Made by a program: the position numbers and the translations under genes
In this document: in pieces, positions 8,997 to 49,000 of the stretch
Numbering within the stretch: the first letter of the stretch is position 1
Layout: each line of letters opens with the position of its first letter
The notes under the pieces: generated by a model
What the model saw: the letters and a program-made list of their open reading frames with translations, nothing else
Database searches by the model: none
What the model was told of the DNA's origin: nothing
Assembly: GCA_963924565.1 (NCBI GenBank)
Contig: OZ004610.1
Location: 6,510,001-6,574,000 of the forward strand
Direction: 5' to 3'
Length of the DNA: 64,000 nucleotides
Source: Ascidiella aspersa
Lineage: Eukaryota

Positions 8997-10744
8997 TTAA
9001 GCATTTTTCTTCACATAGTTGACCGGAAATATGCCCGACCTGCCGTCGACGGTGGTTCCCCTCCACCAGTTCTCGTTAGTTGAGTCCGTGACGATGATGA
9101 CGTCACCACGATGAAAAGCGAGCTCGCCATCTTCTTGGGCCTGGAAGTCGTGGATTGCTGTCACGGTTTTGTCCTGCAAAGTTAGAATGTCAAATGTACG
9201 ACGGTGCAATATCTGCATTTTGGTAGACAAGACTATAAACGTTGCTTGGTGTTTGTGCGTCAAGTGAATGGTTTAGGTTTCTATAGATTTGATCAGGCTG
9301 GTAGAATCTTGCCAGCCTTCTGGAGAAAATCATTTTTGCCCAAATTCAATTCTTTAGTTTTTTGGTCGAGCTCCTAAAGTTAAATACAGCGGTCGCCTAA
9401 AGATTGCATCAACCTTGCCATGTTTAGGCGATAAACAAGGATATTAACAAGTAAATTACACTTAAACTTTTTTAACAATGGCACACCTAAATTAATTCCT
9501 GCCAATTGTAGTGCGTAATGTTCCTACATATTTAACATTTCAAAAATGTAGGTGCTTAAATATTTCTAGAAACAACCACAAGTTTTTTTATAAAAAAATT
9601 TCCAACAAAAAAAATTTTGCACCAATTTCTGCGATAAGACTATAGGGATGAAAAAAATGCGTTACGCGTTGAAATGTGCGGCGGTCATTACTGTCTGCAA
9701 TTAAGTAAGTTTCCGTCCTTATTCAAAAAAAGTCGGTCGTGAGTAAGCGCAGCTTTGGCTGTGAGTTTTTAAACGTCAGGTGTTCGTCACATTTCAAGGC
9801 GGCTCAATTGGCAGGCCGCGGTCTGTGTCCACACTTTATAGCAGGGGTTCTCAAACTTTCTAGGTTTGCGGCACACTAAAAAGATCTTGAGTATTTCGTG
9901 GCACTAGTAACTTTACTACCACCCTTAACATAGCACGACATGTAAAAATGTCCAAATATTATCAGTTTTGTAATAGATAGTGCGTATTTAAGTCTAAAAT
10001 GTTGCGTGTATGCCTATTGGTAATACGAATAACTTAGTTTCCAAAATTACAAAAGTTTCGTGGAACATGCACTTGACAATCTCTCGAGGCACACTAGTGT
10101 AGCGCGGCACACAGTTTAAGAATCACTACTTTATAGGGATTTTCGAAATTGGGCATTTGCAAGAGTGCCACTCGGCCCTATATCAATACAAAGGTTAACT
10201 AGTTGTTAAAAAAAATAACGCGATACCAACACAGCCCGCCCTCTTTTTGCACGCGTTTGCAAAAACACGCTAAAACCAATACCTTTTTGGGATCGCGAAG
10301 CATGATAGTTTTGCTTCTTGAAACCGAACTTGTCCGATGGTATTCTACCAACTGATTGATAGAGGTAAACTTGACCACCCAGAGGAAGTACTTGCCGGCG
10401 CCGTCGCGCAAAATCTTAAAGTGCTCAACGCCGTCAAGGACTCTGACGGAGAGAGAGAAGTCGCCCGGAGTACTTTCGCTCTCTCTGATCAAGAACGCCC
10501 CATTGACCAAGCCTTCCCGACGTAGTTTGGTCTCCGCGTCCTGTCGCTTTATTTTCCCAAGGTACCATTCGTGCGCCTTCATATCAACGTAGTTCCTCGG
10601 GATGAGGCCTTCTCGGCCGTCGATTTCGGCCTTGTACCAGTTAGGGTCATCGCCAAAGTTCAACACTTTCAGAACTTTGCCTTTAGAGAAGGCCAACTCG
10701 TCCGCGTTCTGTGCGACGAAGTCGTACTTCGCAAGAGCTTCCAT
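8997..10744 (-). CDS. GRB2: GRB2/Drk/Sem-5 adaptor (SH3-SH2-SH3), 212 aa; exons 10744-10283 and 9173-8997
   Basis: [28 protein letters not shown] (SH3), [44 protein letters not shown] (SH2), [26 protein letters not shown] (SH3); phase-0 intron AAG|gtattg ... tttgcag|GAC. Confidence 0.96.
9842..10128. mobile_element. hAT-type MITE in the GRB2 intron
   Basis: TIRs caggggttctcaaact / agtttaagaatcacta; perfect 8-bp TSD CTTTATAG; GCGGCACAC subterminal motifs. Confidence 0.85.
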
Positions 10745-29700: not shown

Positions 29701-31519
29701 GTCTATTGCTTGTTTGGTGCTTAATGTGGATTATTATACGCTTTTATTTCACCAACATCACATAACGTCATTTCCATGAGTTTGTGAAACAAAATTTCCA
29801 AAGCACAAAATGCCGCGTCGGATGGCAAACCACGGCCAAAAGATTTGTATCACTGCGAATACAGATACTATACTTCTTTACATCACGTATCGGTTCTAAA
29901 CCTATACTATTGGACATCCTAAATCGGGAGTCGTGGCAGTTCAACGTTAATAAAGTTAAGTTTATATGAAGAACTAAGTGAGTTGAATAGATGTTTTAAA
30001 AACTTTAACGTTATTAGAGCCTTTTAAAAACCTTACTGGTGTTATTCATGAACACAATGCTTTAGTTAGACAAAAAATACAAAATAGCCTTCTAAACAAA
30101 TTGTGTGTAACAAATTGTATTTGTAACAAATTGAATATAACAGATTGTGTTTGTTTACATGAATATTGTGAATCACTAACAAACCACATTTTTTTCTGCT
30201 TTTCAAAAACAACAACAAACGTGTGTTGTGAAAATCTAATATTTAAAGCTTTCATATGCCGGCCAAATAAACGTGTTTCTGCGTTCGTGGAAATAAATAC
30301 AAAAGCATTAAAAACGAAAACGTGACAGGCTTCCAGCCACGGTGAGTGCCATTCCGTGGTGTCGTTTCCGCTTACCTGGTGATCGACAGTTTTTAAACGC
30401 ACGTCGATCAACTTAGCACCTCTTGTAACAACTCGGGTCGGTGCTAATCTGTTCAGTCCTGCTTTGAAATTGCCACTGTCGGTACAAGCAGAATGACAGC
30501 GGTAAAGCGACGGCCAACATTGTCAATTTTGCGCGATATTTAGAACCAAGCTGTCGGAAATTGTGGACATACACTCCAGTCGAAAAGTCTCTAATCGGAG
30601 ACTTCGGAAGGCGATATTGGAGAACTGTTAACCTCGACGATTGGCCTATGCCACTTTATGTAAACAAATACATGGATGTTACATATATCAAATCTACAGT
30701 TTGTAAACATATCCAAGTTTGTATATCATTTTAATAAATTACTGCCTCCTCCAGTCACGCAGTATAGCCGGTTGTTTTGCTCAGGTTTGGAACTGCTAAT
30801 GCCATACTTTGAATGTGTTTACAGAAGTAAATTTAGTCTTGTTTTGTTCGTTAACCTGTACTGGATTTTACGTCGACCTCAGGCCAAAAGAAGACGGGCA
30901 AACTCGTGATATTATTTTAAAGAAAATAAAATTTTCGCGCGAAATCGCTTCCTAAAAGTAAAAAAAAATAAATAAATAAATAAAAAAAAAATAATTACAA
31001 AACCGATTACTGGCCATCTTCCCATTCAGTAAGCCTAATCATACCCGTACAAAGAATGAATTGATCTTAAAGAATGGGTAAGTAAGCGAACCGGTTGTTG
31101 AATAGATTGTATCCAACCACCACCATATTTAGGTAATACTACTAAGTCAGACGAGATGAGTAAGGGCGTTTGTCCGCTTGGAATTTCTTTCTACATTTTT
31201 TTTTTGTTTTTATTCCAACAAAATTTTTCTTTTTTTAATTATTTTCACAGAAAGGATATCTTTCACCGTAACAATGTGACTTATATTAAATTTCCTTGAC
31301 ATTGACTTTTACTATTATTTACTGGATAATGTTGCGTTTAATAAATAGAAATATTAGTACAGTAGAGAATTAACTAGGAATCTTTGAATTTCTGGTCTTT
31401 GTCTTCTCACTAAAACTTACAATGTCAACACAAGAATTGCAGACGTTGAGTGTATTAAAAAATGATTCGGACGAAAACGCCGCGTCGCAAAAATGCGGTG
31501 GAGCGTTTCGGCGGGGCCT

Positions 31520-31570
31520 GGGTGACCTGCAGGGGGCGAATGCACTGAAGCCCCCGCAAGTTCAGCACCC
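31520..31570 (-). promoter_or_regulatory. conserved post-SECIS hairpin in the GPx-B 3'UTR
   Basis: GGGUG-cuga-ACUUGCGGGGGC-uucagugcauuc-GCCCCCUGCAGGU-CACCC; the 13-mer AGUGCAUUCGCCC is shared with the GPx-A 3'UTR. Confidence 0.55.
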
Positions 31571-31577
31571 TCGTCGA

Positions 31578-31650
31578 AATCGCTACGAGCTCGGCCCCTC
31601 CCGTCTGCGCATGCGCAGTTTCCGGGAACGACGTCATTTAGGCATTTTTT
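31578..31650 (-). promoter_or_regulatory. SECIS element (type II) of GPx-B
   Basis: AUGAC-GUCGUUCCCG-G-AAA-CUGCG(CAUG)CGCAG-A-CGGGAGGGGC-CGAG: UGA/GA quartet, 10-bp helix II, unpaired AA, apical ministem; core spans 31637-31590, 57 nt after the TAG. Confidence 0.9.
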
Positions 31651-31693: not shown

Positions 31694-34600
31694 CTAGTCG
31701 TCCAACAGTTCGTTAATCAGCTCGCGCAGCCGACCAACGGACGATGAGTCTCCCATTGTTGAAGTGTAGCTAAAAAAGTAAACCTGTAGTTTTAGCAGAG
31801 ATAATGGACACTTTAAAGTTAAACAAAGCATGGCTACTGAGTCGGTTAAAAATTGTCCGAGTCCGACTCCGTTCAAAAAAATGAACCAAGTCCGAGTCAC
31901 GAGTCAAACTCCGGGCAAATGTGCCATTTCGTCGAGTTCCAAGTCCGGTTCCCCGCCCCCGTATTTCACCCATTTACTTAACTAAAATAGGGTAGGTATA
32001 AAGCAATCGGCTCGCGCAGCCGATTCACTGGTGAGGAGTCTCCCATGGTTGAAGTGAAGCTGAAAAAGTAAAACTATGCTCTTATGGCGGAGAAAACGGA
32101 CACTTTAAAGCGCTGCTAAGACGGTTAAAAATAACTCGAGTCTGACTCCGGCCAAAAAAATGAACCCGAGTTCGACTCCCGAGTCTGACTCCAGGCATAT
32201 ATGCGATCTCGTCGAGTTCCGAGTCCGGTTCCAACTCTTCAGCCTGTATTTCACCAATTTTACCCCCCTTGGTGGAAAATATTCCACCATTTCTATTCCA
32301 CGTTTATATTTTACAGTTTGCGGCATTATCAGAAATAGATATCAGCTTACCTTTCGCTTAAAAGTTGATTAATCCACGGTTTAAGGTCGATCGGTAAAGT
32401 CGAGCTCTCGAAACGGAATCTGCAAGATGTAATCAAAACTTTCAGGTGTGTAAAAGTTACGCCTGAAAACCACACACGTTTTTGACTTTGCTTCGTGTTG
32501 TTAAATTTGCTTATAATTTGCAGTTTCTTATTTAGTAGGTCATCATTATTTTCCTATGGTTGACACAAATTTTACAACTTAAATTTGCATAAATAAAATT
32601 GTAAAGCTATCGTTGCAAACTTTTATTTGCTGTTCGCCCCTTTTGAAGAAAAAGTACTAAATTGTTCTTATTTTTTTTATCCACCAATGATTGACTTTAC
32701 TAAAAAAACGAAACTGAAGTAAGAGGTAAAGTAGGTGAAGGGTTTTGGATGAATATCTTTTTATTGACGGTCCTTCTACTTAATAACCATTCTACTTGAA
32801 AACCATACACCATAAAGGTTCTGATGCCGCTACGAAGCTAGGGAGTATAGGGACCGTGATGTGAACTGCGCACGACAGTAGAAGATCAGTTATCCGTTTC
32901 GTTTTTGGTGGTAGCAGTACTGTATTAAGTAGCAGGTAAATAGTTAGTATTATTGTAGCTATTATTATTTTGTCACAAAACACAACTGTGTCTGATAAAA
33001 ACGTCACTCCTGAATCAAGCAGACACCGTACGATAGCCTTTTTCATTTGTACTAAACAGGCCTGGTAGCAACAGCATATTTATTTATCTATGTTTATTGT
33101 TTTTTATTACGATAACCTTATATAAATTCTAAACAAGTGACACATTCGCGTAAAAATAATTTAAAACTTTTCTGCACACCTTGGTACTCCCTTTTTGTCG
33201 AGCAGAAATTTGTTAAAATTCCACGTAATGTCGTTGCCGCGTATGGGGTCCCAGAAGAATTCTGTCTTCGTGCCGATAAGGTTGCCCACAGTTGGACAGG
33301 ACGCCTGCGAAATTGCAATTTTAGCGCTTTACCCACAACGTAAAACACGAGGTTGTTTCTTGTTAAGATAACGCGTTTTGTAATTGTAAAAAAAGTAATT
33401 ATTTATTTAATTATCGTGCGTAATCACAACCGCGCTTTGGCTAATAACCGCCGCGAATGAGCATTGTATCAGTGATTCTCAACCTTTTATGGCTTATGGC
33501 ACCCCTTAAAAATAATTAATAAATAGATTTTCGGCGCATCGACTGGAATTTTTGTTTTTTTCGGTATTTTACTAAAATGTCACTGTAAATGTAACTGGAA
33601 CAACACAATCAACTTACAACATGTGGGAAAATGTCATTTGATATAACAGTCTCTAATCGTACGCAAATGGTTGTATCATAAATCTTCCCAATTGAGCAAA
33701 AAATAGATTCCTAACCATTCCCAAACACCTATCGGCACCCTTGAGCATTAGAAACGGCACACGAGGGCGCTGCGGCACCCCGGTTGAGAACCACCGCATT
33801 ATAGCCTCCCATTAGAATTAATAAGCCAGAACATTATTGTTTTTTAATTTCACTTCTAAACTTAGTTTATAAGGCTCTACAAACAAAACGTATAGATTTA
33901 TCCCGAACGAGACGCGACTTAACTCACATAGACAGCATGTCTTGTACAGTATTAAGTTCAAATAAAATATTCATATGTAAACTTTAGTGTGCCATTTTAG
34001 AATTTAGGACAAACAATATCCCATCAGCGTTAAATTGTAGAAAACCATGTGTTGCTGTCAATAAGTATAGAATGTTTTATTTCAACGATATACGTGACTT
34101 TCCTAGCGACTAAAAGGCGGGACCTTGGAATGGTTGTCTGTGGCATATAGGTCAAAAATTTCTACGAACTTTTTCTGCTATTGCTAAAGAGATGAATAGA
34201 TGACTGGTGTGCCTTTGAGTCCGCAACGCAATGGAAATTACTGCCATGACAATCGCAATATGCTCTTTAGGCATAAGCCGCTTGCGAGTGTTTAAGAGCA
34301 AAATGTCTCAGTTACTTATTTGTTGCACACGTTGCAATATCTAACGTGTTATCATCATTAGAACTTTTAAGCCCGTTTCAATGGTTTTCAAACGGATTGG
34401 TTACGGCAGTGGTTCCCAACGCATGGGTCGCGACCCAAAGTTGGGTCGCCTGATTATTTTTTGGGGTCGCTTGTTTTCAGGCATATTGTATCTTTTAACA
34501 AAACTGGAAATCATAACCACAAAATATGAAAACTAAACAGCGAAACCGGCTGGTTGTTAAAGCTGACATGCGTGACATGCGTGTTACATGGTCCAGCAAA

Positions 34601-37600
34601 ATAACGCCTTGATTTCAAAAACTCACTGACAACAAGCGAGCACAACTATCTCATTCGTAATTTAATAAACATATTATTTTTGGAAAAAGTAACTGCTTTT
34701 GTAGTGCAGTTTGTTTGCAACGCAATCTTGTATTTGCTTGGGTCGCAAGATTATACAAAATAATTTTTTTTTCATATTGGGTCGCCTTAAAAACGTGTTG
34801 GGAACCACTGGTTTACGGCAAACTAAATCTAATAAAGTCCGCCGCACACTTTCTATAGAAAACAATAAAGACAAAACTTTTTCCTAATGCACTTCAAAGC
34901 ATTAGCTAAATGTAACAATGTTATCAGTTTTTTTAATAGTGCGTATTTTCTACGTATACCCTTGTATGCTAGCTTTATGCTTGCTTATTTGTATACAAAC
35001 AAAAGTGTTTCCAAAATTACAAAAAAGTTTTACGGCACACTTCAAAATTTCTCAAGGCACCTTTAAAAATCACTGGACTATATGTACTCAAATTTAAAGC
35101 ATTTTGGCGTGATGAAAAATAACCTCCAATTTCTACGAGATCTTTTTTATATTGACAATATTTCGTTCTAAACTTTTTTTTGTTACGTCGCATGAATCAC
35201 TTAGTGATAGAACATGACGTAAACACCCCTAAACCCTTGGCACCACGTATTTTTCCAGCGAAAAATTGTTTTAATTCTTTACAAAGCTTGTTTGGCAAAA
35301 AGAGAGTTTTTACCTTCATTTTCTTGTAAAGCTGCTCTTCGTTCTGTCCGTTCACTTCCACTTTGGTAAAGAAGTTTATCTTCGGGTTAGGAACGTAACC
35401 GTGACCGGGCCGAACGTACCTGATACCGTTGAAAATCTCCAAGTCGGTACCGGGCTCCTGTAGACCGAACTGGTTGCTGGGGAAGGCAAGGACGACCAGT
35501 GGCCTGTCTTTGTATTCCTGCGGAAAGAGTATAGTAGATGTATTTAACCTGCACTACCTAGCAAACCCGTTGTCACTGTCAGTTTACGCACAATAAGAGA
35601 TATGCGATTTGTTTTTAAAATATCTTCTAATAATGACAAGTTGCTGTACGGTATCCATTTTTTCTCTATTTTGTGGTGTTTTCTTGGCACCTACACTCAG
35701 TTGTTCCTAACCAGGATCATATAAATGCGGAAAATGAATTTAGTGGATGCATATAAGGTTATCGTAAATCATACAGAAAACTGCTAAACCAGTGGTTCTC
35801 AACCTTTTATACTTTGTGGCCTCCTTTTAAAGGCTCTCAACCCTCGTGCCCCCCTGCTTATCAAAAATACCTAATTCTATTTAACGTGTTTTCACTTGTT
35901 TTACTTCTTCACGTTTTTAACAAATACAGCCATTAATCAACGAATATTAAATTATCTTAGTTAGTCATTACAGAGTTTGTTCTTGGACTCCGCCAAAGTA
36001 TTTTTATATTCAGCTTTGTTTTGTACTGAGCCAAGCGATGTCACAACATTTGTCGATGATTTCTCCATTTTCGTTTTACTAATGCGTTACTATTACTTCA
36101 GCGATTTATAAGTTGTTGAAAAGTTTATTTCGCCTTTGAGTAAGACAGGATAGTCCTTATACGTGGCTTTAACGAATATAAGTGGTGTGCGGTCAAAATC
36201 GTGCTATTTCGACCACGTCATGTAATAATTAGGTATTTTAGATAAGCAGAAATAAGGGTTGAAGTCTCTGACAATCAGTCTCGCATGAATAATGCAATTT
36301 ATATCAGATTAAACATATTTCAACTATAACGCTTAGTTTGTTTACTGTAGTTTGTTGATTTATATTTTTAAAGGTGAACACAGTACATGTCTTGGATTAA
36401 CGTTTTTGTTTAGTCTTATTTTTGTACACGAAGTAAAGTCAGGTAGCAGCTGCTCAATGACTCAGTTTTTCGCTACCCCATGGGAACTACGAACGCCTCT
36501 CTTATTTTAATTTTTCGCGTGTTTACACTGTAATTTCAAAATAAATTTCAATATATCCATCTATCTTTGTTCATGAGTTTACCCTTCATTCTTTACCTTT
36601 TTTACAGTTCTGTCCACTTACTTGTAGTAGTGCATTCAGGCTGTGGTACTGAGATTTGGTGAGACCTCAGTAGGTCGCCACGTTCACGGCGATGGAGACG
36701 TTACCCTTGAACTTGCGAAGGTTAACTACAGACCCATTCTGTTGACTCGAAAACGTGTTGTCGTACACCGAGTACTGAAGTAAAAATGATATAGAAATAA
36801 TAAAAACGCACTTTATGCAAAGCTAACAAGGCTTGTCGAGTAAACCAAATTGGCTTGGCCGTTTCGGAGCCTACTGGTAACGTGCTTCAACAATCCGAAG
36901 TCACCTTGCATTGCACTTGAAAGGCGTATGTCAGGGGTCGGAAACCTGCGGCCCGCCTTGAATGTTAAAATTTTAGTTAGTCTTTTGCTCGTATATATGC
37001 CTTTCGAGAAAAGTTTGACGCCGTATACAGCTTGGAACTATCAATAGAAGTTTCGCTAATCAGTATATTTGAATTCAATGTATTGTGCTTCGCACTAGTT
37101 TATTGCGTCTTTTAAATACAAACGTAAAAAATACCAAGAGTTTAACATTCCTATTCATCTTACACGAGAAACTGGTTTGACGATTAAATTTATTGCATGT
37201 TTTTTACACCTTTTTAATGTGATTATGGTTGAAGCTGTGCTGACTCGATTTTAATCCAAACAAACGCAAATGCGAACGTCTTGTCGTCTTCTCTGTAAAT
37301 GTAGAAAATTTGCTGATTTTCAAATGGAAAAAAAAACTAGGTCCGTCTCTTAATAACAGTCGTTTCAATGCTAGTAAATTATCAGTTTACATTTATAACG
37401 GCCCGTCGAGACTCTTCAAAATTTGGGTAAGGCCCGCGACTAGTAAAAGGTTGCCTCCCTGATATATGTGATCTAAAATGACATCCATTTCGGCCATTAT
37501 TTTTGTTTCAACTATAATACTAGTTTACATTTTATTCGGGCAAAAACCGGCGAAGTTAAATTTAGTCGATTTAACTTATTTGCCTTGTTTTATTGTTTTC

Positions 37601-39211: not shown

Positions 39212-40921
39212 GTGTTTAATCTGCGTTAAACTGACACAGACTGCTACATTATAGCTGCCATATATGCATGCTTGCTGACGATGGAACACTGTGTTAAACT
39301 GCAAGTTGGACCCTTCACTAGAAATTTTATTCCAATGCATTTCCTGCCTGACAATTCATTGACAGCAGAAAAAATTATTTCAGTACTTTCGAAGCAAAGC
39401 GGATCTAACAGAAAGCCACAATAATTTGATTCGTTCAACGCAACAGCGGGTACACCATGTAGCCCTAAAGCCAGATATTTGTCAATCAATATACTTGCTA
39501 ACTAAGCGGCTGTAGGCTACTCCAGAGCGACCCACTGGACTTTCAACGTTGTTCAAATTCTCGCTAAAATAAGCGCTCCCATTGAAAAAGTCGTCTCGTA
39601 TCCTGCAGGACTTATAGCTAGTTAGGAAGTTTATCGGTCTTTGCAACTTATAATTGCGAACCTTGGCCTTCTTTTAAATTGGGAAAATGAATCACGCAGA
39701 ATTTGACAACGTTTGACAATTCGTTCCAAATTCAAAATGACCGTTTAGAACAGTTGTCGGTGAACTGTGGGCCGCAGATCCATTTATAGTGGGCCGCGTG
39801 TTACTTTTGAATAGCTTAGTGGTATAATGTAGTTTTGGGCCGCGTGATAGCCGTACATTCATTGCATTTAATTTAAAAGTTAGCGTAGCATAGCATTTTG
39901 AACTTGACTCTTGGAAAGTCTCACGTGCCAAATAAGGTCCTGAAAACCCGTCGAACAATACTTTTGCAAACTTTAGCAGTATGTAATTGAAAACAATTTC
40001 GCGCTTCACGTATATGCTTCGTTTTATAGAATGTTTGACATTGTGGTATGGCATTTTTTGTCACAAAGTCGCCGTGTAATAATATTTCACCTTAATAACA
40101 AAAATCCTGAATCCGCCACTATTTTGTAGTGGTGTTACGTAGTTGACCTTCAATAACTCTAAAAATAATGCTTTGGGCCGCGACAAAAAAGTTTTTGGAC
40201 CACTGGTTTCGAAAGTACCCATTACAGGGCCGTGATCTAACATCTATAAATACTTTTAGTTAGCTTATATACTCAAGTATATTCTAAACCTGTCCTATTC
40301 ACACAGCAGATAAGCTGGCCGTACGAGTTCAGGCAAAGGCCTTAGCTCTCTTCGGGAACTTTAGGCTATACGGAGGCCAGTAAAGAAACAAACTGAGCGC
40401 TTGTAATTCAAATACGCAGAGGTAATTTCCATTTAACTATATTTGTTGTTTTGCAATGCAATACCAAAATCTAACTGTGTCTAAGCCGTTCCAGTAACCT
40501 TTAGGCTTGTTGCAAGTAGTCATTTTTAGCCCAAGTTAATAATCACATACCTTAATTTTGGCCTTATTCTGTCTACTTTAACTAGAAGAACAGTAGTAAC
40601 AGCCATGGTTCTTAAAAATGTTTTAAACTTGATATAGGCACTGTCCGGCAATACAATGTAAACCTATAGTAATTTATAACGCCCCTCTTTAAAATACACG
40701 ATTTCCTACTTTCCTTGTGTTTATATTCTGTAGGTTATAAAATCAACCTTTGGGTGCAAATATGAACTTAAATACTTTAGAAAAGCCATATGTCCGAACT
40801 AGGAAGTAAAATAAACTCTTACTGAACAGATAATACAAAACACCCAACGCATTTAAATATTTAAATTAATATAATATTTTTTTACGTTTATATTGGCCAT
40901 CACTAAATGCAAACCAAATAC

Positions 40922-41495: not shown

Positions 41496-43860
41496 GTGTT
41501 TAATCTGCGTTAAACTGACACAGACTGCTACATTATAGCTGCCATATATGCATGCTTGCTGACGATGGAACACTGTGTTAAACTGCAAGTTGGACCCTTC
41601 ACTAGAAATTTTATTCCAATGCATTTCCTGCCTGACAATTCATTGACAGCAGAAAAAATTATTTCAGTACTTTCGAAGCAAAGCGGATCTAACAGAAAGC
41701 CACAATAATTTGATTCGTTCAACGCAACAGCGGGTACACCATGTAGCCCTAAAGCCAGATATTTGTCAATCAATATACTTGCTAACTAAGCGGCTGTAGG
41801 CTACTCCAGAGCGACCCACTGGACTTTCAACGTTGTTCAAATTCTCGCTAAAATAAGCGCTCCCATTGAAAAAGTCGTCTCGTATCCTGCAGGACTTATA
41901 GCTAGTTAGGAAGTTTATCGGTCTTTGCAACTTATAATTGCGAACCTTGGCCTTCTTTTAAATTGGGAAAATGAATCACGCAGAATTTGACAACGTTTGA
42001 CAATTCGTTCCAAATTCAAAATGACCGTTTAGAACAGTTGTCGGTGAACTGTGGGCCGCAGATCCATTTATAGTGGGCCGCGTGTTACTTTTGAATAGCT
42101 TAGTGGTATAATGTAGTTTTGGGCCGCGTGATAGCCGTACATTCATTGCATTTAATTTAAAAGTTAGCGTAGCATAGCATTTTGAACTTGACTCTTGGAA
42201 AGTCTCACGTGCCAAATAAGGTCCTGAAAACCCGTCGAACAATACTTTTGCAAACTTTAGCAGTATGTAATTGAAAACAATTTCGCGCTTCACGTATATG
42301 CTTCGTTTTATAGAATGTTTGACATTGTGGTATGGCATTTTTTGTCACAAAGTCGCCGTGTAATAATATTTCACCTTAATAACAAAAATCCTGAATCCGC
42401 CACTATTTTGTAGTGGTGTTACGTAGTTGACCTTCAATAACTCTAAAAATAATGCTTTGGGCCGCGACAAAAAAGTTTTTGGACCACTGGTTTCGAAAGT
42501 ACCCATTACAGGGCCGTGATCTAACATCTATAAATACTTTTAGTTAGCTTATATACTCAAGTATATTCTAAACCTGTCCTATTCACACAGCAGATAAGCT
42601 GGCCGTACGAGTTCAGGCAAAGGCCTTAGCTCTCTTCGGGAACTTTAGGCTATACGGAGGCCAGTAAAGAAACAAACTGAGCGCTTGTAATTCAAATACG
42701 CAGAGGTAATTTCCATTTAACTATATTTGTTGTTTTGCAATGCAATACCAAAATCTAACTGTGTCTAAGCCGTTCCAGTAACCTTTAGGCTTGTTGCAAG
42801 TAGTCATTTTTAGCCCAAGTTAATAATCACATACCTTAATTTTGGCCTTATTCTGTCTACTTTAACTAGAAGAACAGTAGTAACAGCCATGGTTCTTAAA
42901 AATGTTTTAAACTTGATATAGGCACTGTCCGGCAATACAATGTAAACCTATAGTAATTTATAACGCCCCTCTTTAAAATACACGATTTCCTACTTTCCTT
43001 GTGTTTATATTCTGTAGGTTATAAAATCAACCTTTGGGTGCAAATATGAACTTAAATACTTTAGAAAAGCCATATGTCCGAACTAGGCATAACTATGTGA
43101 TCAGACGTATTACATGGATAGCGCTGTGTATGGCTTCAAGATAACTCCGCCCGTGTAATAAATGGAAATATGTCTTCTAATACCCTTAGTTGGAAGCTAA
43201 TTAATGTTAAACCAAATTAGAATCAACTCGTGACGTGAGTCATCTGTCGTGCCCAAAGAGGCCTTACAACTATGAAGTTTAAATTACATTTTGCGGGCCT
43301 ACTTTTCCTATCTGAAAGCCGAAAAGATCAGCAGGCCTAAGACATTCCACTGAGTTGCTCATCGCTTCTTTGTAACCTATTCCTTCTAAGATATCTCCTT
43401 CTATGTATCCCTTAGCACAATATAGATTCTAGCCGCCTAAAAGCTGATCTCCATATGCAAAGTTCTGAGTTAGAGCGAGAAGAGTATTAGTTCCTTCCCT
43501 TCAAAGAATATTTGGAAAGCTCGCTTTTAGGATAGCTCTTGCTGCTTCGACTGACAATAGTTCTTAACAATCGACCTAAATTACAGGCTGTGATGCACAA
43601 GATTACGTCGTGTAGGCCAATGACTTGTATTGGTATTAAAATTATATTTGCTGCCTATTTCTTTAAATAGATTAGGGTTGGGCGTGGACAAATGCGAGTT
43701 CTAACGCAAATCAAAGGACATCTATGACGAAGTGGTCTTTAAAATATAGCTTTACATCTATCGAAACAACCCCTACAAAGATTTGTCAGTTGCCAACATG
43801 TTTTTACTCGACTGCCTAGAGGACCTCACAGAAAACCGCCGTTACCCCACATCAAGCATA

Positions 43861-44083: not shown

Positions 44084-45885
44084 TACATGCTGTCACTCTC
44101 ACGCCACTCACGCACAAAAATGAAATATATTCTCGGTGTTCTGCATTAAACTAAGATTACAAATTTGATAATCTCAGGGGAACCCTGGTGATTTTATGAA
44201 TAATTGTATTGACAACAACCAGGAAACGGCGCCGTCCACATCCAAATCCGGCATAGGATATGCATGTCCGTAATATAACGACTGCCCACTCATAATTCAA
44301 TATTATCGCGCCTAATGAAATTTTCTGCACCCATTTGCTTTGTTTATCTATCTGGGTTTATTCTTGTTTGTACCTTTTGTGAGTTACAAAAAAACTAATT
44401 TCAGCAAATTTATTTGTTTACAACATAGTAAACCTTTTAAGAGTTTTTTTTTTCAAACTGTAAATTTGTGACACACATCGATCAGTGAATTAACAATACT
44501 AAATGAATCGCATTAAAATGAATATAATAATCTTTATAATGTCAAAATACTGGCACTTTGTTATTATACAATAAAATACATCTTACTTTATTACCAAAAA
44601 GTTATCCAATTACCCTTTTTTGGCAATTATAACAGGCTAAGAATCACTGATTTAAGCTCTACGCATTTATACAACCTGTCAAACGTCGCTCTGGCGAATT
44701 ATCTTGGATTGACGAGTCTACATCGCTTTGCTAGACAGCAGATGTCAGTAGCCATAAGCCGTCAGGATGCTGCACAACCGAAATTAAGCGTGGAATCGTG
44801 CATATGCCAGGCGCCTTTACAATTATGACATCCGCCCGAAAGAACAGAGAGCCTCTGCCGCCTTATGGCAGGACTTGTATCAATGTTACTAGTTTTGGAT
44901 GAAAAAACGCGCTATCGGTAAATTAATCGGCCAGATCGATTATGTGCTACTCGAGTTATGTGCACACGTTTTCACCTTATTTTATATACAGTATATACAC
45001 AGATGTACAATTATTGTAAAATTAGCCTCGTCAGAAACCCACCCGGATTAACATGGAGGTGTTTTATTTGAAACATTACAGTATCATGTTTACAGATTTC
45101 ATTGAACGCAATATTATGTTTGTAGTTTCCGACGATTTATAAATAGTGTTTATGGACTTGTTTGTCTGTCGTTTCAACCAATCATCAGACACTGCCATGG
45201 TGCCTTTCAAGATTCTATTATACCGCTTCGCATGGCTTTGAAGTCAGCAAGACTGTTTGTCGCAATAACAGAAACCTTTAATAAACGACATTCAACCTTC
45301 TGTAACAATCTTCTAGCGTTTATTACTTTATAACGACATTCTTCCTTTCAATATTTATGTGTTTTTTTTAAATAAAAATAAATCTGATTCGTAATGCTTA
45401 AAAAATACTTTCGCGCTTCAACAAAATTACGATATACTTAAATATGCTGATAAACAACTATATTCGGTTATTATTTATCTCTAGCTTTAAATTAACTTGA
45501 ACCTTTAAACTAATTTGGGAAACTTTATCATAACATCGTGGATCAAGGCAAGAAAGGTGAACAAAATTTAACGCTTTTCGACAACGACTGTTCTCCATTT
45601 GTATACTGAACGAATGCTGTTGTATCTGAAATATAAGGGTAAACTTTAAATAGCCTAAAATGGCAAATGTTATAAACGAATTGTCGCCTACTCTACTCTG
45701 TTTGAAAGAGTACACGAAATGCAAAATCATGATTCTAACTAAAAACCTACGCTAATATGCCACGACTCTCACGGACTGCGAAAAAACAACACAAACATAT
45801 CTCACGTTGGAGTTTAATTTCCCCTAATTAAAACAAATTATCGCAAAAGCGCGCTGGAAATGACGAGACACTTCGGTGACGTCAC

Positions 45886-45923
45886 ACGTCATCGGGCGAA
45901 TGCACTAAATTCCCTGATGACGT
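45886..45923 (-). promoter_or_regulatory. conserved post-SECIS hairpin in the GPx-A 3'UTR
   Basis: ACGUCAUCAGGG-aauuuagugcauucg-CCCGAUGACGU; contains AGUGCAUUCGCCC. Confidence 0.55.
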
Positions 45924-45937
45924 CAACAATCTCCTGG

Positions 45938-46005
45938 GTGGTCCCTAAATCGGCCCCAACCCGACTGCCAGCGGCAGTTTACGGGTGAGGCGTCACAGAC
46001 TTTCC
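45938..46005 (-). promoter_or_regulatory. SECIS element (type II, GUGA core) of GPx-A
   Basis: GUGAC-GCCUCACCCG-U-AAA-CUGCC(GCU)GGCAG-U-CGGGUUGGGGC-CGAU; core spans 45996-45949, about 60 nt after the TAA. Confidence 0.9.
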
Positions 46006-46056: not shown

Positions 46057-49000
46057 TTATTTCATGAGAAGGTCGTCGACCCAGTTGGTGAGGATGCTGG
46101 CCAGAGGCCCGCTTCCGAATCGCCACCTGGAAAAGATAAAAATATGATTTAAGAGCGTATTTACTACTGGGGGCAAAAATACTGTCTAAACTTGGCGAAT
46201 CACATGGGGAAAACTAATTACTTCCTTTCATTTACATGCACCCTGTCTAAAGGCAAACAATGCTTCGTAATTTAAAAAATGTTATTCGGTGTATGCTGTT
46301 GGCTGTTGTTTTTTGGCAAAAAACAAAAAGCGTTTTCGTTGACTCTAAACGGCGAGATTTGGCTTTCACGTTTGCTGACCTCATTCATGTGCTAAGCGAG
46401 TAAGCCCGATACTTTCCTTAGCAGATGTCTAATATTTATAAGAAATGTAGGGCGTCAGATCCGACTTTCACAAGAAAGCAGTATAAACGTGAGCGTTGTC
46501 GCAACAGTTGTAGCCCATATGTTTGTTCCTTGCAGTGTAACGTACCTCGGGATACCTTCCTTATCCAGCAGAAACTTGTTGAAGTTCCAGTAGATATCGT
46601 TGGCCTTGATGGGCGACCAGTAAAGTTCGCTCGTGATGCCGATGTTGGGGCTGGTGGGAGGACACGACGCCTGAAAGACAGAAATCGTTGTTTTATGGTC
46701 ATGCATAACCTCTTTGGTGTTGTTTGACTTAAGCGTAGCTTTGGTTTAAAAATAATTGGGAAGCTAAGCAAGTCATTGGTCAAATTCAATAAGTACAACA
46801 ACAAGCTTTTTAAATTTAACATATATATTTTAGGTGATTTAACTAAATTAAGAACTACTCAGGAATGGTTGGAGGTTGTAGTAAGATATAGTAAGAATAT
46901 CAAAGCCCAAACAGAAGTAGATATTATTGTAAATGTTTCAAATAACTCTTTTATTCATTTTCAATCTGTTTAAATGTGAAATTTTAACGTTAAGTGATGA
47001 TAAGACAAGTACGATGATACAAGTTTTGGCTTTAAGATTCATTTACAAGCTACATTACAGATCCGTGAATAGTGTATGTCACGATTAGTCTGCATTTTTT
47101 TTAAAGCTGTAAAAGTAGTAAAACCATTGGTGGAACACAACGGTAGAATTCTGCTCAAACCTCTCAGCCAATCGGTTCGTCAGCTGTACCTACATAATAA
47201 AGCCATACATCTATTCACACCTTCAAGTTGGTAAAGAAGGGTTCCTCCGTTGCCCCGTTCACTTCGCTCTTGGCGAAGAAGAAGATCTTCTTGTTGGGCA
47301 CGAATCCGTGTCCCGGCCTCACGTATTTGACGCTGTTGACAATCTCGTCGTTGGCGTCTGGTTGCTGCAAACCAAACTGGTTGCAGGGAAAGGCGAGCAC
47401 CACAACTGGTTTGTTGGTGTATTGCTGCGCGAGAGGTCATAATAGTTATTATAATGACGTAGGCTACTTGGAAGCAATATTTGTAATATCCTGGGTCAAT
47501 GTTAATTGTTTTGAAATATTGTGTTAACTTGATTGAAATCTTTAACGCAAAATTGCTTTATTTTTACCAAAAATATTGGGACCCTTGGGTTGAACAAAGT
47601 GAAAAGATTTTCCTAATTGGAAAATTGTTTTTCCAAGTAGTAAATCTTTTGCTAATGACTTATTTATCTTTGTAAATTGTTTTGGGAATCTAAAAAATTA
47701 ATCGTTTCTTTGTTTGGCAATTTCGATTTGATGTCAATGATTTAACTGGGATGACTAGAACCATAACTAATAGTAATGAATTCTGTTAAAAATATAGGAG
47801 GTTGTGAAACAAACCGAATGTATTTAAAACGCTGTAATTGTCCGGCTGGTAAAGGCAGTGTAGCTTATAAACAGAGGTTTCGGTATTTTTGTAATAAAGC
47901 GTTTAATCTCAGCGAAAATTTGGAGTTTTTGCTGTCACGAAAATACAAAAAAACAGTCTTGCACTTACCTCAAGTAGTGCATTCAGGCCCTTGTACTGGG
48001 GCGCAGTCTGGCCTCAGTAGGTGGCCACGTTGATTACAAGGGAAACGTTGCCCCGAAATTCGTCCAGGCTCACCATGTTACCCATGAGGTCGGTGAACTT
48101 CTGGTCGTACACCGAAAACTACAAGTGAGAAAAATATGTCTGAAGTTTTTAAAGGGGTGGTTGTCCACGTTTGTGGATATAGTCACACATTTTTAAAGGT
48201 CTCGTGATGAAAAATACAGGTTTTAAGTTTTAATCATGTTAAAAATCAGCAGTTGGTAGAGAAAAATAACTGCGAAGATTCCACTCATAGCAATATTTGT
48301 TTCTATTGTACCTGAAATAAATGCCTTTATTTAGGCAGGAAATAAAGATTTTTGTTTGTAAGAACAAAATTGGGACAGTATTTCAATGAGAATTTATCAA
48401 CGATCGTTCGCCAAGGAGTGTTTTTTATTTTCTTGTTTTGCAAAACAAAATTATTTTAGGAACATTACACGTTATATATGGCATAATAAAGCCGTACAAT
48501 TGTCTAGGTGTGTTGATTGTTTCGTATACAGCGAAGTTGAAACACAGTAAATGAGCTGGATTAACTCCAACCAAAATGTAACGGGTTTTAATACAAAAAT
48601 TAGGGTCAAATTTACAGCGTTTTGTTTAAAGTTTAGTGCCATTGCCTCTGAAAAACACATTATAAATGTCCATCATCTTTTTTTTAAATAAAGACATTTT
48701 GATCTGATCAAATGATAAATAAACAACACTGATTGGCCTAGTTCAGTGGTTGCCAAACTTTTTTATTTCGTGGCCTAATTTTTTTTACAAAGCAGATCGA
48801 AGCCCATCGTTTTTTTCACCTCTGGTAATGCCTATTACATATTCATTACCAAAAGTTTGCCAATATTATAAGGATTTTTGTTCCTTGCAACAATTGGAGC
48901 TTTAATAAGTTCCAGTGTGTCAAAGTTAAACAACTCGCACGCACAGTTTTCACAAGACATTTTAAGTACGCCAAAAATATTTTAGTACCACTATTTTAGT

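What the first reader, a model, noticed from the sequence alone, without database searches (positions are those of the whole stretch)
31520..31570. Candidate new SECIS-companion RNA element conserved in both GPx paralogs
Seen: the two GPx 3'UTRs show no obvious similarity by eye except for the SECIS and a UU(C/U)AGUGCAUUCGCCC motif (15/16 identical; 13-mer at 31546-31534 and 45906-45894). The motif begins 44 nt (B) and 43 nt (A) after the last base of the SECIS quartet. In both genes it occupies the loop and 3' shoulder of a strong hairpin whose stems are largely different in sequence (ACUUGCGGGGGC/GCCCCCUGCAGGU vs ACGUCAUCAGGG/CCCGAUGACGU). Sequence, spacing and structure are therefore all kept across an old duplication. 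Inference: a second cis-element that tunes Sec insertion, selenium hierarchy or mRNA stability, through a protein-binding loop or a miRNA site. I know of no described element with this sequence.
Basis: partly seen in the sequence, partly recalled or inferred. Interest (0 to 1): 0.85.

Follow-up and report, generated by a model that had tools for sequence, protein, structure and literature searches.

The report
SECIS-adjacent hairpin complementary to Sec-codon region
Two old tandem copies of a selenocysteine glutathione peroxidase gene keep, just after their SECIS element, a hairpin whose loop can base-pair with the coding sequence 29 nt past the UGA-Sec codon, which hints at a direct RNA link between the recoding signal and the recoded codon.

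Summary
The 16-mer UUYAGUGCAUUCGCCC sits at 31534-31549 (GPx-B) and 45894-45909 (GPx-A) on the minus strand. These are the only two exact copies in the 308.6 Mb genome, and the motif is not part of a repeat.

- **Age of the duplication:** the paralogs are 54% identical in protein and 38% identical at four-fold sites. Of the 3'UTR, only the SECIS core, this hairpin and a weak block near the likely poly(A) site remain alignable.
- **Structure:** both copies fold into hairpins (-20.6 and -16.3 kcal/mol). The outer stems differ, with four double compensatory changes.
- **New here:** the loop 9-mer AGUGCAUUC is the exact reverse complement of GAAUGCACU in the Sec exon of both genes, 29 nt after the UGA. 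That word lies inside the longest identical run of the whole coding alignment.
- **Scope:** the genome's three other Sec-GPx genes have neither the motif nor any such complementarity, so this is not a general SECIS companion.

My best reading (0.40) is a long-range pairing between the 3'UTR loop and the coding sequence that couples the SECIS to the UGA. The evidence therefore rests on two paralogs.

The parts
31525..31561 (-). GPx-B 3'UTR hairpin: a 12-bp stem (31550-31561 with 31525-31537, U31531 bulged) and a 12-nt loop (31538-31549).
   Evidence: MFE -20.6 kcal/mol, z -2.5. All 12 pairs verified.
31534..31549 (-). Conserved 16-mer in GPx-B. It covers the loop plus the first 4 nt of the 3' stem strand. 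The 9-mer 31538-31546 is the part complementary to the CDS.
45886..45923 (-). GPx-A 3'UTR hairpin: an 8-bp outer stem, bulged A45915, a 3-bp GGG/CCC inner stem and a 15-nt loop (45897-45911).
   Evidence: MFE -16.3 kcal/mol, z -3.2. Pairs verified.
45894..45909 (-). Conserved 16-mer in GPx-A. The stretch 45897-45907 can pair with the CDS (10 Watson-Crick pairs plus 1 G-U).
31579..31645 (-). GPx-B SECIS, with the type-II layout: AUGA 31634-31637, AAA, a mini-stem, and GA 31591-31592.
   Evidence: Rfam SECIS_1 scores 18.6 bits, below the cut-off of 35. Fold.
45944..46004 (-). GPx-A SECIS, homologous to B's (74% identity over the core) but with GUGA (45993-45996) in place of AUGA. GA is at 45950-45951.
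   Evidence: Rfam does not call it.
36629..36638 (-). GPx-B coding partner of the loop: the exact reverse complement 9-mer at 36629-36637, plus a flanking U for a G-U pair. It lies 29 nt after the UGA and 7 nt before the exon end.
47975..47985 (-). GPx-A coding partner of the loop: the exact reverse complement 10-mer at 47975-47984, plus a flanking U. It lies 29 nt after the UGA.
36667..36669 (-). GPx-B UGA-Sec codon.
48014..48016 (-). GPx-A UGA-Sec codon.
31426..31456 (-). GPx-B putative 3'-end signals: AAUACA 31451-31456, CAACGU 31443-31448, UUGUGUUG 31426-31433. This is inferred from sequence, not shown. A second AUUAAA lies at about 31337-31342.
45787..45818 (-). GPx-A putative 3'-end signals: AUUAAA 45813-45818, CAACGU 45804-45809, UUGUGUUG 45787-45794. 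This is inferred from sequence, not shown.

Best explanation
Each of the two tandem Sec-GPx mRNAs carries a selectively maintained stem-loop in its 3'UTR, about 30 nt after the SECIS. The stem-loop presents the sequence AGUGCAUUC in a large apical loop. This loop most likely base-pairs with the complementary GAAUGCACU in the coding region, 29 nt downstream of the UGA-Sec codon. That gives 9 Watson-Crick pairs plus a G-U in B, and 10 plus a G-U in A. Such a long-range contact would hold the neighbouring SECIS, and whatever it recruits, next to the ribosome that is decoding UGA. Alternatively it could gate ribosome passage just after the UGA. Either way it would tune Sec insertion for this gene pair only. 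Shown: conservation, hairpin potential, complementarity, uniqueness in the genome. Inferred: that the pairing forms in vivo, that it affects recoding, and that the element lies inside the mature mRNA.
For: (1) The motif is exact at both sites and nowhere else in 308.6 Mb. (2) The duplication is old: 54% protein identity and 38% identity at four-fold sites. Introns do not align. Yet the hairpin segment aligns with z 5.1. (3) Both copies fold into hairpins more stable than shuffles (z -2.5 and -3.2). Six stem pairs are unchanged, one changes on one side and four change on both sides. (4) The distance from the SECIS differs by 1 nt although the linker sequence is not conserved (z 1.6). (5) The reverse complement of the loop 9-mer occurs on the mRNA strand of the 64-kb window only twice, at homologous places in the two Sec exons, 29 nt after each UGA. 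(6) That word lies in the longest identical run (16 nt) of the whole coding alignment. For the longest UTR block and the longest CDS block to share a 9-nt complement by chance, I calculate about 40/4^9 = 1.5e-4. (7) With restricted windows (45 nt after the UGA against 150 nt after the SECIS), P = 0.007 (B) and 0.003 (A). Three other Sec-GPx genes give P of 0.2 to 0.9. (8) A third paralog encodes the same L-N-A-L with different codons and lacks the motif. (9) The loop is predicted unpaired (P > 0.9 in B). Net pairing energy after opening costs is -8.4 (B) and -10.1 (A) kcal/mol. (10) There are precedents in kind. A possible pairing between a UGA-proximal element and the SECIS was proposed for selenoprotein S (PMC6844570). 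Long-distance pairing is needed for readthrough in tombusviruses (PMC3234231).
Against: The evidence comes from only two paralogs of one genome. There are no orthologues, no covariation within the long-range duplex, and no RNA data. A 9-10 nt complement somewhere between a whole 270-nt UTR and the whole CDS is common by chance (P about 0.1 for 10 nt or more, and about 0.36 for 9 nt or more). The significance therefore depends on restricting the test to the conserved blocks or to the UGA-proximal window, and I found the complementarity post hoc. Identical codons at L-N-A-L are only mildly unusual (P about 0.055), and a second run of 4 identical codons exists elsewhere. The duplex starts 30 nt after the UGA, beyond the ribosome's leading edge when UGA is in the A site, so it is not a simple roadblock. 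In A, part of the loop can pair locally. A's stem arms are TGACGTCA-like palindromes that would pair for trivial reasons. The poly(A) site is inferred from hexamers only.
Confidence: 0.4

Rival explanations
1. The hairpin is a real, selected RNA element, but it works by presenting its loop to a protein or other trans factor. It would control mRNA stability, localisation or Sec efficiency. The match to the coding sequence is a coincidence.
For: Sequence, structure and spacing are conserved. The two U's 5' of the complementary 9-mer are also conserved, and the pairing model does not explain them. 9-10 nt complements between a UTR and a CDS are common by chance. The auxiliary UTR elements known in selenoprotein S (SPUR, PSL) have no demonstrated RNA partner (PMC6844570).
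Against: The complement falls on the longest conserved coding run, 29 nt after the UGA, in both genes. I could recognise no known RNA-binding-protein motif in the loop; that rests on memory, not on a test.
Confidence: 0.27
2. There is no function. The motif is residual homology from the duplication, or a short gene-conversion patch, and the hairpins are incidental to GC-rich sequence.
For: Only two sequences are available. With a generous 'neutral' identity of 0.5, a 13-nt run in about 250 aligned positions has P of about 0.03 (my calculation). Over the wider 161-nt region of B, the fold is not more stable than shuffles (z -1.0).
Against: Four-fold sites are 38% identical, and introns and the UTR linker do not align. 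With 0.38 the run has P of about 1e-3. Flanks this diverged should not support gene conversion (established knowledge of homology requirements, not tested here). Two independent hairpins sit at the same offset with different stems.
Confidence: 0.1
3. It is a DNA-level element. The same 9-bp word occurs twice per gene in opposite orientation, in exon 2 and in the 3'UTR, as binding sites for a DNA-binding factor. The CpG-rich, palindrome-rich 3' ends would then act as regulatory DNA.
For: Complementary words on one strand are the same duplex word inverted. The UTRs are unusually rich in GC and CpG for a 38% GC genome. They hold the palindromes GCGCATGCGC (B) and TGACGTCA (A).
Against: The fixed offset from the SECIS and the compensatory stem changes around the word point to RNA. 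One stem pair in B is G-U, which is valid only on the sense RNA strand. The 13-mer is not enriched in the genome (4 hits against 1 for the control).
Confidence: 0.08
4. It is small-RNA biology: either a target site for a miRNA or other small RNA, or a source of a small RNA whose first nine bases match the GPx coding sequence.
For: The conserved core is the length of a seed plus flank. The 13-mer's first 9 nt are complementary to both GPx coding regions.
Against: A 12-bp stem is too short for a canonical miRNA precursor, and the conserved part sits in the loop rather than in an arm. No small-RNA data or miRNA list for this species was available. No Rfam miRNA family matches.
Confidence: 0.06

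Closest known systems
SPUR and PSL elements of the selenoprotein S 3'UTR (Bubenik 2013, PMC3628699; Cockman 2019, PMC6844570)
   Same: Both are gene-specific auxiliary RNA elements in a selenoprotein 3'UTR, separate from the SECIS, conserved in sequence and structure, and affecting UGA recoding. The authors even raise a possible pairing between SPUR and the SECIS.
   Different: SPUR and PSL lie in the first 91 nt of the UTR, upstream of the SECIS and next to a penultimate UGA. The element here lies downstream of the SECIS, its candidate partner is inside the coding region, and there is no sequence similarity. Function is untested here.
Selenocysteine redefinition element (SRE) downstream of UGA in SELENON, and the SELENOP SRE1 (PMC5727441)
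   Same: It is an RNA feature placed a few tens of nt 3' of the UGA-Sec codon that modulates recoding. The coding partner found here lies in that territory.
   Different: An SRE is a local stem-loop formed within the coding region. Here the partner of the UGA-proximal sequence would be about 560 nt away in the 3'UTR.
Long-distance RNA-RNA interactions needed for readthrough or frameshifting in plant plus-strand RNA viruses (tombusvirus readthrough, PMC3234231; review PMC5893793)
   Same: A sequence just 3' of a recoding site pairs with the loop of a 3'UTR stem-loop hundreds to thousands of nt away.
   Different: Those are viral RNAs that use near-cognate decoding or slippage, with no SECIS or Sec machinery. 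They are experimentally proven; this case is only predicted.
SECIS element (Rfam RF00031)
   Same: It is a stem-loop in the same 3'UTR, about 30 nt away, and is conserved together with the hairpin.
   Different: The hairpin has no UGA/GA quartet on its two strands and no AAR motif, so it is not a second SECIS.

Membership tests
SECIS element (as a second SECIS) | [quoted passage not shown] | tested here: not met
   Both genes have UGA just 5' of the hairpin, but B has no GA on the 3' side. Rfam gives no SECIS match over the hairpin.
SECIS element (as a second SECIS) | An AAR motif in the apical loop or bulge at the right distance from the quartet. | tested here: not met
   The loops hold no AAR at the required spacing.
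SelS-type auxiliary UTR elements (SPUR/PSL) | Location in the proximal 3'UTR, between the UGA/stop codon and the SECIS. | tested here: not met
   The element lies 3' of the SECIS, at UTR positions 133-169 (B).
SelS-type auxiliary UTR elements (SPUR/PSL) | Mutation changes UGA recoding without changing mRNA level. | not testable with these tools
   This needs a reporter assay.
SRE (local recoding stem-loop) | A stem-loop formed locally within the coding sequence directly 3' of the UGA. | tested here: not met
   The hairpin is in the 3'UTR. Exon 2 alone does show a small local stem (UACUG with CAGUA) that encloses the UGA, but it does not involve the motif.
Long-distance recoding interaction (viral type) | Conserved complementarity between a sequence near the recoding site and a 3'UTR loop. 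| tested here: met
   9-10 Watson-Crick pairs plus a G-U in both paralogs, 29 nt after the UGA.
Long-distance recoding interaction (viral type) | Co-variation of the two partners, and loss and rescue of recoding by mutation and compensation. | not testable with these tools
   The two sites are identical in both paralogs, so there is no co-variation to count. Orthologues were not obtainable.
miRNA precursor | An imperfect stem of about 22 bp or more, with the conserved mature sequence in an arm. | tested here: not met
   The stems are 11-12 bp and the conserved part is in the loop.
Dispersed repeat | Many copies in the genome. | tested here: not met
   There are two exact copies of the motif, and the UTR matches only itself.

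The most novel reading that the evidence does not exclude
A cellular selenoprotein mRNA solves the 'SECIS at a distance' problem by direct RNA-RNA pairing. A loop placed about 40 nt 3' of the SECIS docks onto the coding sequence 29 nt 3' of the UGA. This delivers the SECIS complex to the decoding ribosome, and would be a cellular counterpart of the long-distance recoding interactions of plant RNA viruses.
Probability: 0.35. Interest if true: 0.85.

Novelty: new variant of a known kind. Interest (0 to 1): 0.62.

Why it matters
How a SECIS in the 3'UTR communicates with a ribosome paused at a UGA hundreds of nucleotides upstream is still unsettled. Gene-specific efficiency of Sec insertion (the selenoprotein hierarchy) is also only partly explained by SECIS differences. 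A conserved loop next to the SECIS that is complementary to the sequence just past the UGA offers a concrete model, testable by compensatory mutation, of physical coupling between the two sites. If the pairing turns out to be irrelevant, the hairpin is still a clean example of a gene-family-specific auxiliary UTR element outside vertebrates. So far only selenoprotein S offers a studied case of that kind.

Tried and rejected
- **RNA reads:** No runs, and therefore no read laying, were possible, so expression and the 3' end are not shown.
- **Metagenome scans:** the SECIS-anchored motif gave nothing. The looser 21-nt pattern gave two hits in GC-rich contigs without a SECIS or hairpin, which I take as chance.
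- **Exon-sized protein query:** The search for homologous proteins found no candidates in the allowed length range.
- **Rfam:** no family reaches its gathering score in the window. Only a sub-threshold SECIS_1 hit in B and chance-level hits appear. The genome scan with RF00031 scored only 129 of 5300 candidates, so it is not a census.
- **Covariance model:** a model built from the B hairpin alone sees only the loop in A (7.4 bits, E about 9). The tools cannot take a hand-made structural alignment of two sequences with different stem registers, so I ran no structural genome scan.
- **RNAduplex on long inputs:** unrestricted runs gave meaningless whole-length duplexes. I replaced them with exact-run counts and shuffles.
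- **Readings considered and rejected:**
  - a second SECIS (no quartet);
  - a miRNA precursor (stem too short);
  - coding potential (a 91-codon ORF spans B's UTR, but there is no counterpart in A, and the indels are not multiples of three);
  - a repeat.
- **Literature:** a search for the motif letters found nothing.
- **Spliced model:** The coding partner was folded within exon 2 alone.

Full report
**What is there**

The window carries two Sec-containing glutathione peroxidase genes in tandem on the minus strand.
- GPx-B has coding exons at 36622-36774, 35314-35517 and about 33180-33304, and a last exon that ends at the TAG 31694-31696.
- GPx-A has coding exons at 47969-48118, 47221-47424 and about 46546-46670, and a last exon that ends at the TAA 46057-46059.
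- Each has an in-frame UGA in the NVATY-U-G active-site context, plus the FP-x-NQFG and WNFNKF motifs.
- Each 3'UTR has a type-II-like SECIS. B has AUGA 31634-31637 and GA 31591-32, and is seen by Rfam SECIS_1 at 18.6 bits, below the cut-off. A has GUGA 45993-45996 and GA 45950-51, and Rfam does not call it. The two SECIS cores are 74% identical.
- I searched the exons one by one and did not join them for any search or fold.

**The observation**

- The 16-mer is exact at 31534-31549 and 45894-45909.
- Genome-wide (308.6 Mb) these are the only exact copies. The four one-mismatch hits equal the control count and lie in unrelated sequence.
- The 13-mer core occurs four times; the other two copies are unrelated.
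- B's whole UTR matches nothing but itself. The motif is therefore not a repeat.
The motif starts 42 (B) and 41 (A) nt after the A of the SECIS GA.

**How old is the duplication, and is the motif more than leftover similarity?**

- Exon-by-exon codon alignment gives 54% protein identity, 61% nucleotide identity, 43% at third positions and 38% (17 of 45) at four-fold sites.
- Introns do not align.
- The 3'UTR, segment by segment against dinucleotide shuffles:

| Segment | z | Shuffles at least as good |
|---|---|---|
| Stop codon to SECIS | 0.2 | 136 of 300 |
| SECIS core | 7.4 | 0 of 300 |
| Linker | 1.6 | 34 of 300 |
| Hairpin | 5.1 | 0 of 300 |
| Next 130 nt | 3.0 | 1 of 300 |
| Beyond that | 0.5 | 98 of 300 |

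- The UTRs are collinear, with offsets of only 2-7 nt over 270 nt.
- The weak 3' block holds a PAS-like hexamer at UTR position 238 (B, AAUACA) and 239 (A, AUUAAA), followed by shared CAACGU and a GU-rich UUGUGUUG. That is the usual layout of a cleavage site.
- I infer that the hairpin lies about 90 nt upstream of the poly(A) site. This is an inference from sequence only.

**Structure**

- B folds into a 12-bp stem with one bulge and a 12-nt loop (-20.6 kcal/mol, z -2.5).
- A folds into an 8-bp plus 3-bp stem with one bulge and a 15-nt loop (-16.3 kcal/mol, z -3.2).
- Aligned from the base of the stem, six pairs are the same, one changes on one side and four change on both sides.
- The conserved 16-mer covers the loop and the first four bases of the 3' strand.
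- Caveat: A's arms are TGACGTCA-like palindromes, which pair trivially.

**The new point**

- The loop 9-mer AGUGCAUUC is the exact reverse complement of GAAUGCACU.
- On the mRNA strand of the 64-kb window that word occurs only at 36629-36637 and 47976-47984. These are homologous places in the two Sec exons, 29 nt after each UGA and 7 nt before the exon end.
- With flanks, the duplex has 9 Watson-Crick pairs plus a G-U in B (-13.2 kcal/mol) and 10 plus a G-U in A (-14.5).
- The coding word lies in the longest identical run of the whole A/B coding alignment. That run is 16 nt; the run over the Sec codon is 11 nt.
- For the longest UTR block (13 nt) and the longest coding block (16 nt) to share a 9-nt complement, I calculate a chance of about 40/4^9 = 1.5e-4.
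- With windows restricted to 45 nt after the UGA and 150 nt after the SECIS, shuffles give P = 0.007 (B) and 0.003 (A). The same test on the three other Sec-GPx genes of the genome gives P = 0.24, 0.20 and 0.89.
- One of those paralogs encodes the same L-N-A-L with different codons and has no motif.
- The loop is predicted open (P > 0.9 in B). After opening costs, the net pairing energy is -8.4 (B) and -10.1 (A) kcal/mol.

**Cautions**

- A 9-10 nt complement somewhere between a whole UTR and a whole CDS is common. P is about 0.1 for 10 nt or more. B has two other such matches, one of them with the hairpin's 5' arm.
- Four identical codons in a row has P of about 0.055 and also occurs at the start of the exon.
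- I found the complementarity after looking at several other ideas.
- The two sites are identical in both paralogs, so there is no co-variation to count.
- The same facts fit a DNA word used twice in opposite orientation.

**Scope**

- The genome has at least three more Sec-GPx genes, with AT-rich canonical SECIS elements, and one Cys-GPx. None has the motif.
- This is therefore not a general companion of SECIS elements. It is a feature of this gene pair.

**Organism and relatives**

- The best GPx match is Ciona intestinalis H2XPC7 (58% over one exon). The GRB2-like exon in the window is closest to Ciona savignyi (64%).
- The genome is probably a tunicate or another deuterostome with no close relative in the libraries.

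**Known systems**

- Auxiliary UTR elements for Sec recoding are known for selenoprotein S (PSL and SPUR). There the authors raise a possible pairing with the SECIS (PMC6844570).
- Local SRE stem-loops follow the UGA in some genes (PMC5727441).
- Long-distance pairing between a recoding site and a 3'UTR loop is established in plant RNA viruses (PMC3234231, PMC5893793).
- The motif letters appear in no paper of the library.

**Verdict**

- The conserved hairpin is real and very probably selected; I put that at about 0.75-0.8.
- A role through pairing with the UGA-proximal coding sequence is my leading mechanism, at 0.40.
- A protein-binding loop with a coincidental complement follows at 0.27. 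The DNA-level, no-function and small-RNA readings share most of the rest.

Noticed in passing
window 39244-40054 and 41528-42338: A 2284-bp tandem duplication lies in the spacer between the two GPx genes. Identical 81-aa and 120-aa ORFs recur at that spacing.
   Followed up: no
window 31715-32260: A tandem duplication of about 285 bp (about 80% identity) covers GPx-B's last coding exon and part of the intron. It ends before the 3'UTR, so the SECIS and hairpin are single-copy.
   Followed up: partly
window 45993-45996: GPx-A's SECIS has GUGA instead of AUGA in the quartet, and Rfam SECIS_1 misses it. Helix II shows compensatory changes relative to GPx-B.
   Followed up: partly
window 36660-36672 / 48007-48019 with 36645-36650 / 47992-47997: A local stem, UACUG pairing with CAGUA, encloses the UGA-Sec codon in both genes. 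It is made from the conserved Y-U and Q-Y codons and may be an SRE-like feature.
   Followed up: no
window about 31485-31497 and about 45842-45853: A second small shared hairpin, CGC(A)-UUUU-(U)GCG, lies about 55 nt after the main hairpin, around the shared 8-mer UUUUGCGA.
   Followed up: no
window 31604-31615; 45877-45925: B's SECIS apical mini-stem is the palindrome GCGCAUGCGC. A's hairpin arms and the following 10-mer are TGACGTCA-like palindromes. Both UTRs are CpG-rich islands in a 38% GC genome.
   Followed up: no
window 36708-36717 with 31555-31564: A 10-nt complementarity, in GPx-B only, links exon 2 upstream of the UGA with the 5' arm of the hairpin. It is at chance level (P about 0.1) and is absent in A.
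   Followed up: partly
window 10199-10744 (-): A GRB2/drk-like SH3-SH2 exon. The best matches, only 64-66% identical, are spread across many animal phyla, so the genome has no close relative in the protein library.
   Followed up: partly
L007 (G000:C7:9562096-9562812), L010 (G000:C3:18947810-18948740), L011 (G000:C7, 17375400-17377742), L012 (G000:C1:33308561-33308848): The genome has three further Sec-GPx genes with AT-rich canonical SECIS elements, two of them intronless over the Pfam GSHPx (PF00255) match, and one Cys-GPx.
   Followed up: partly
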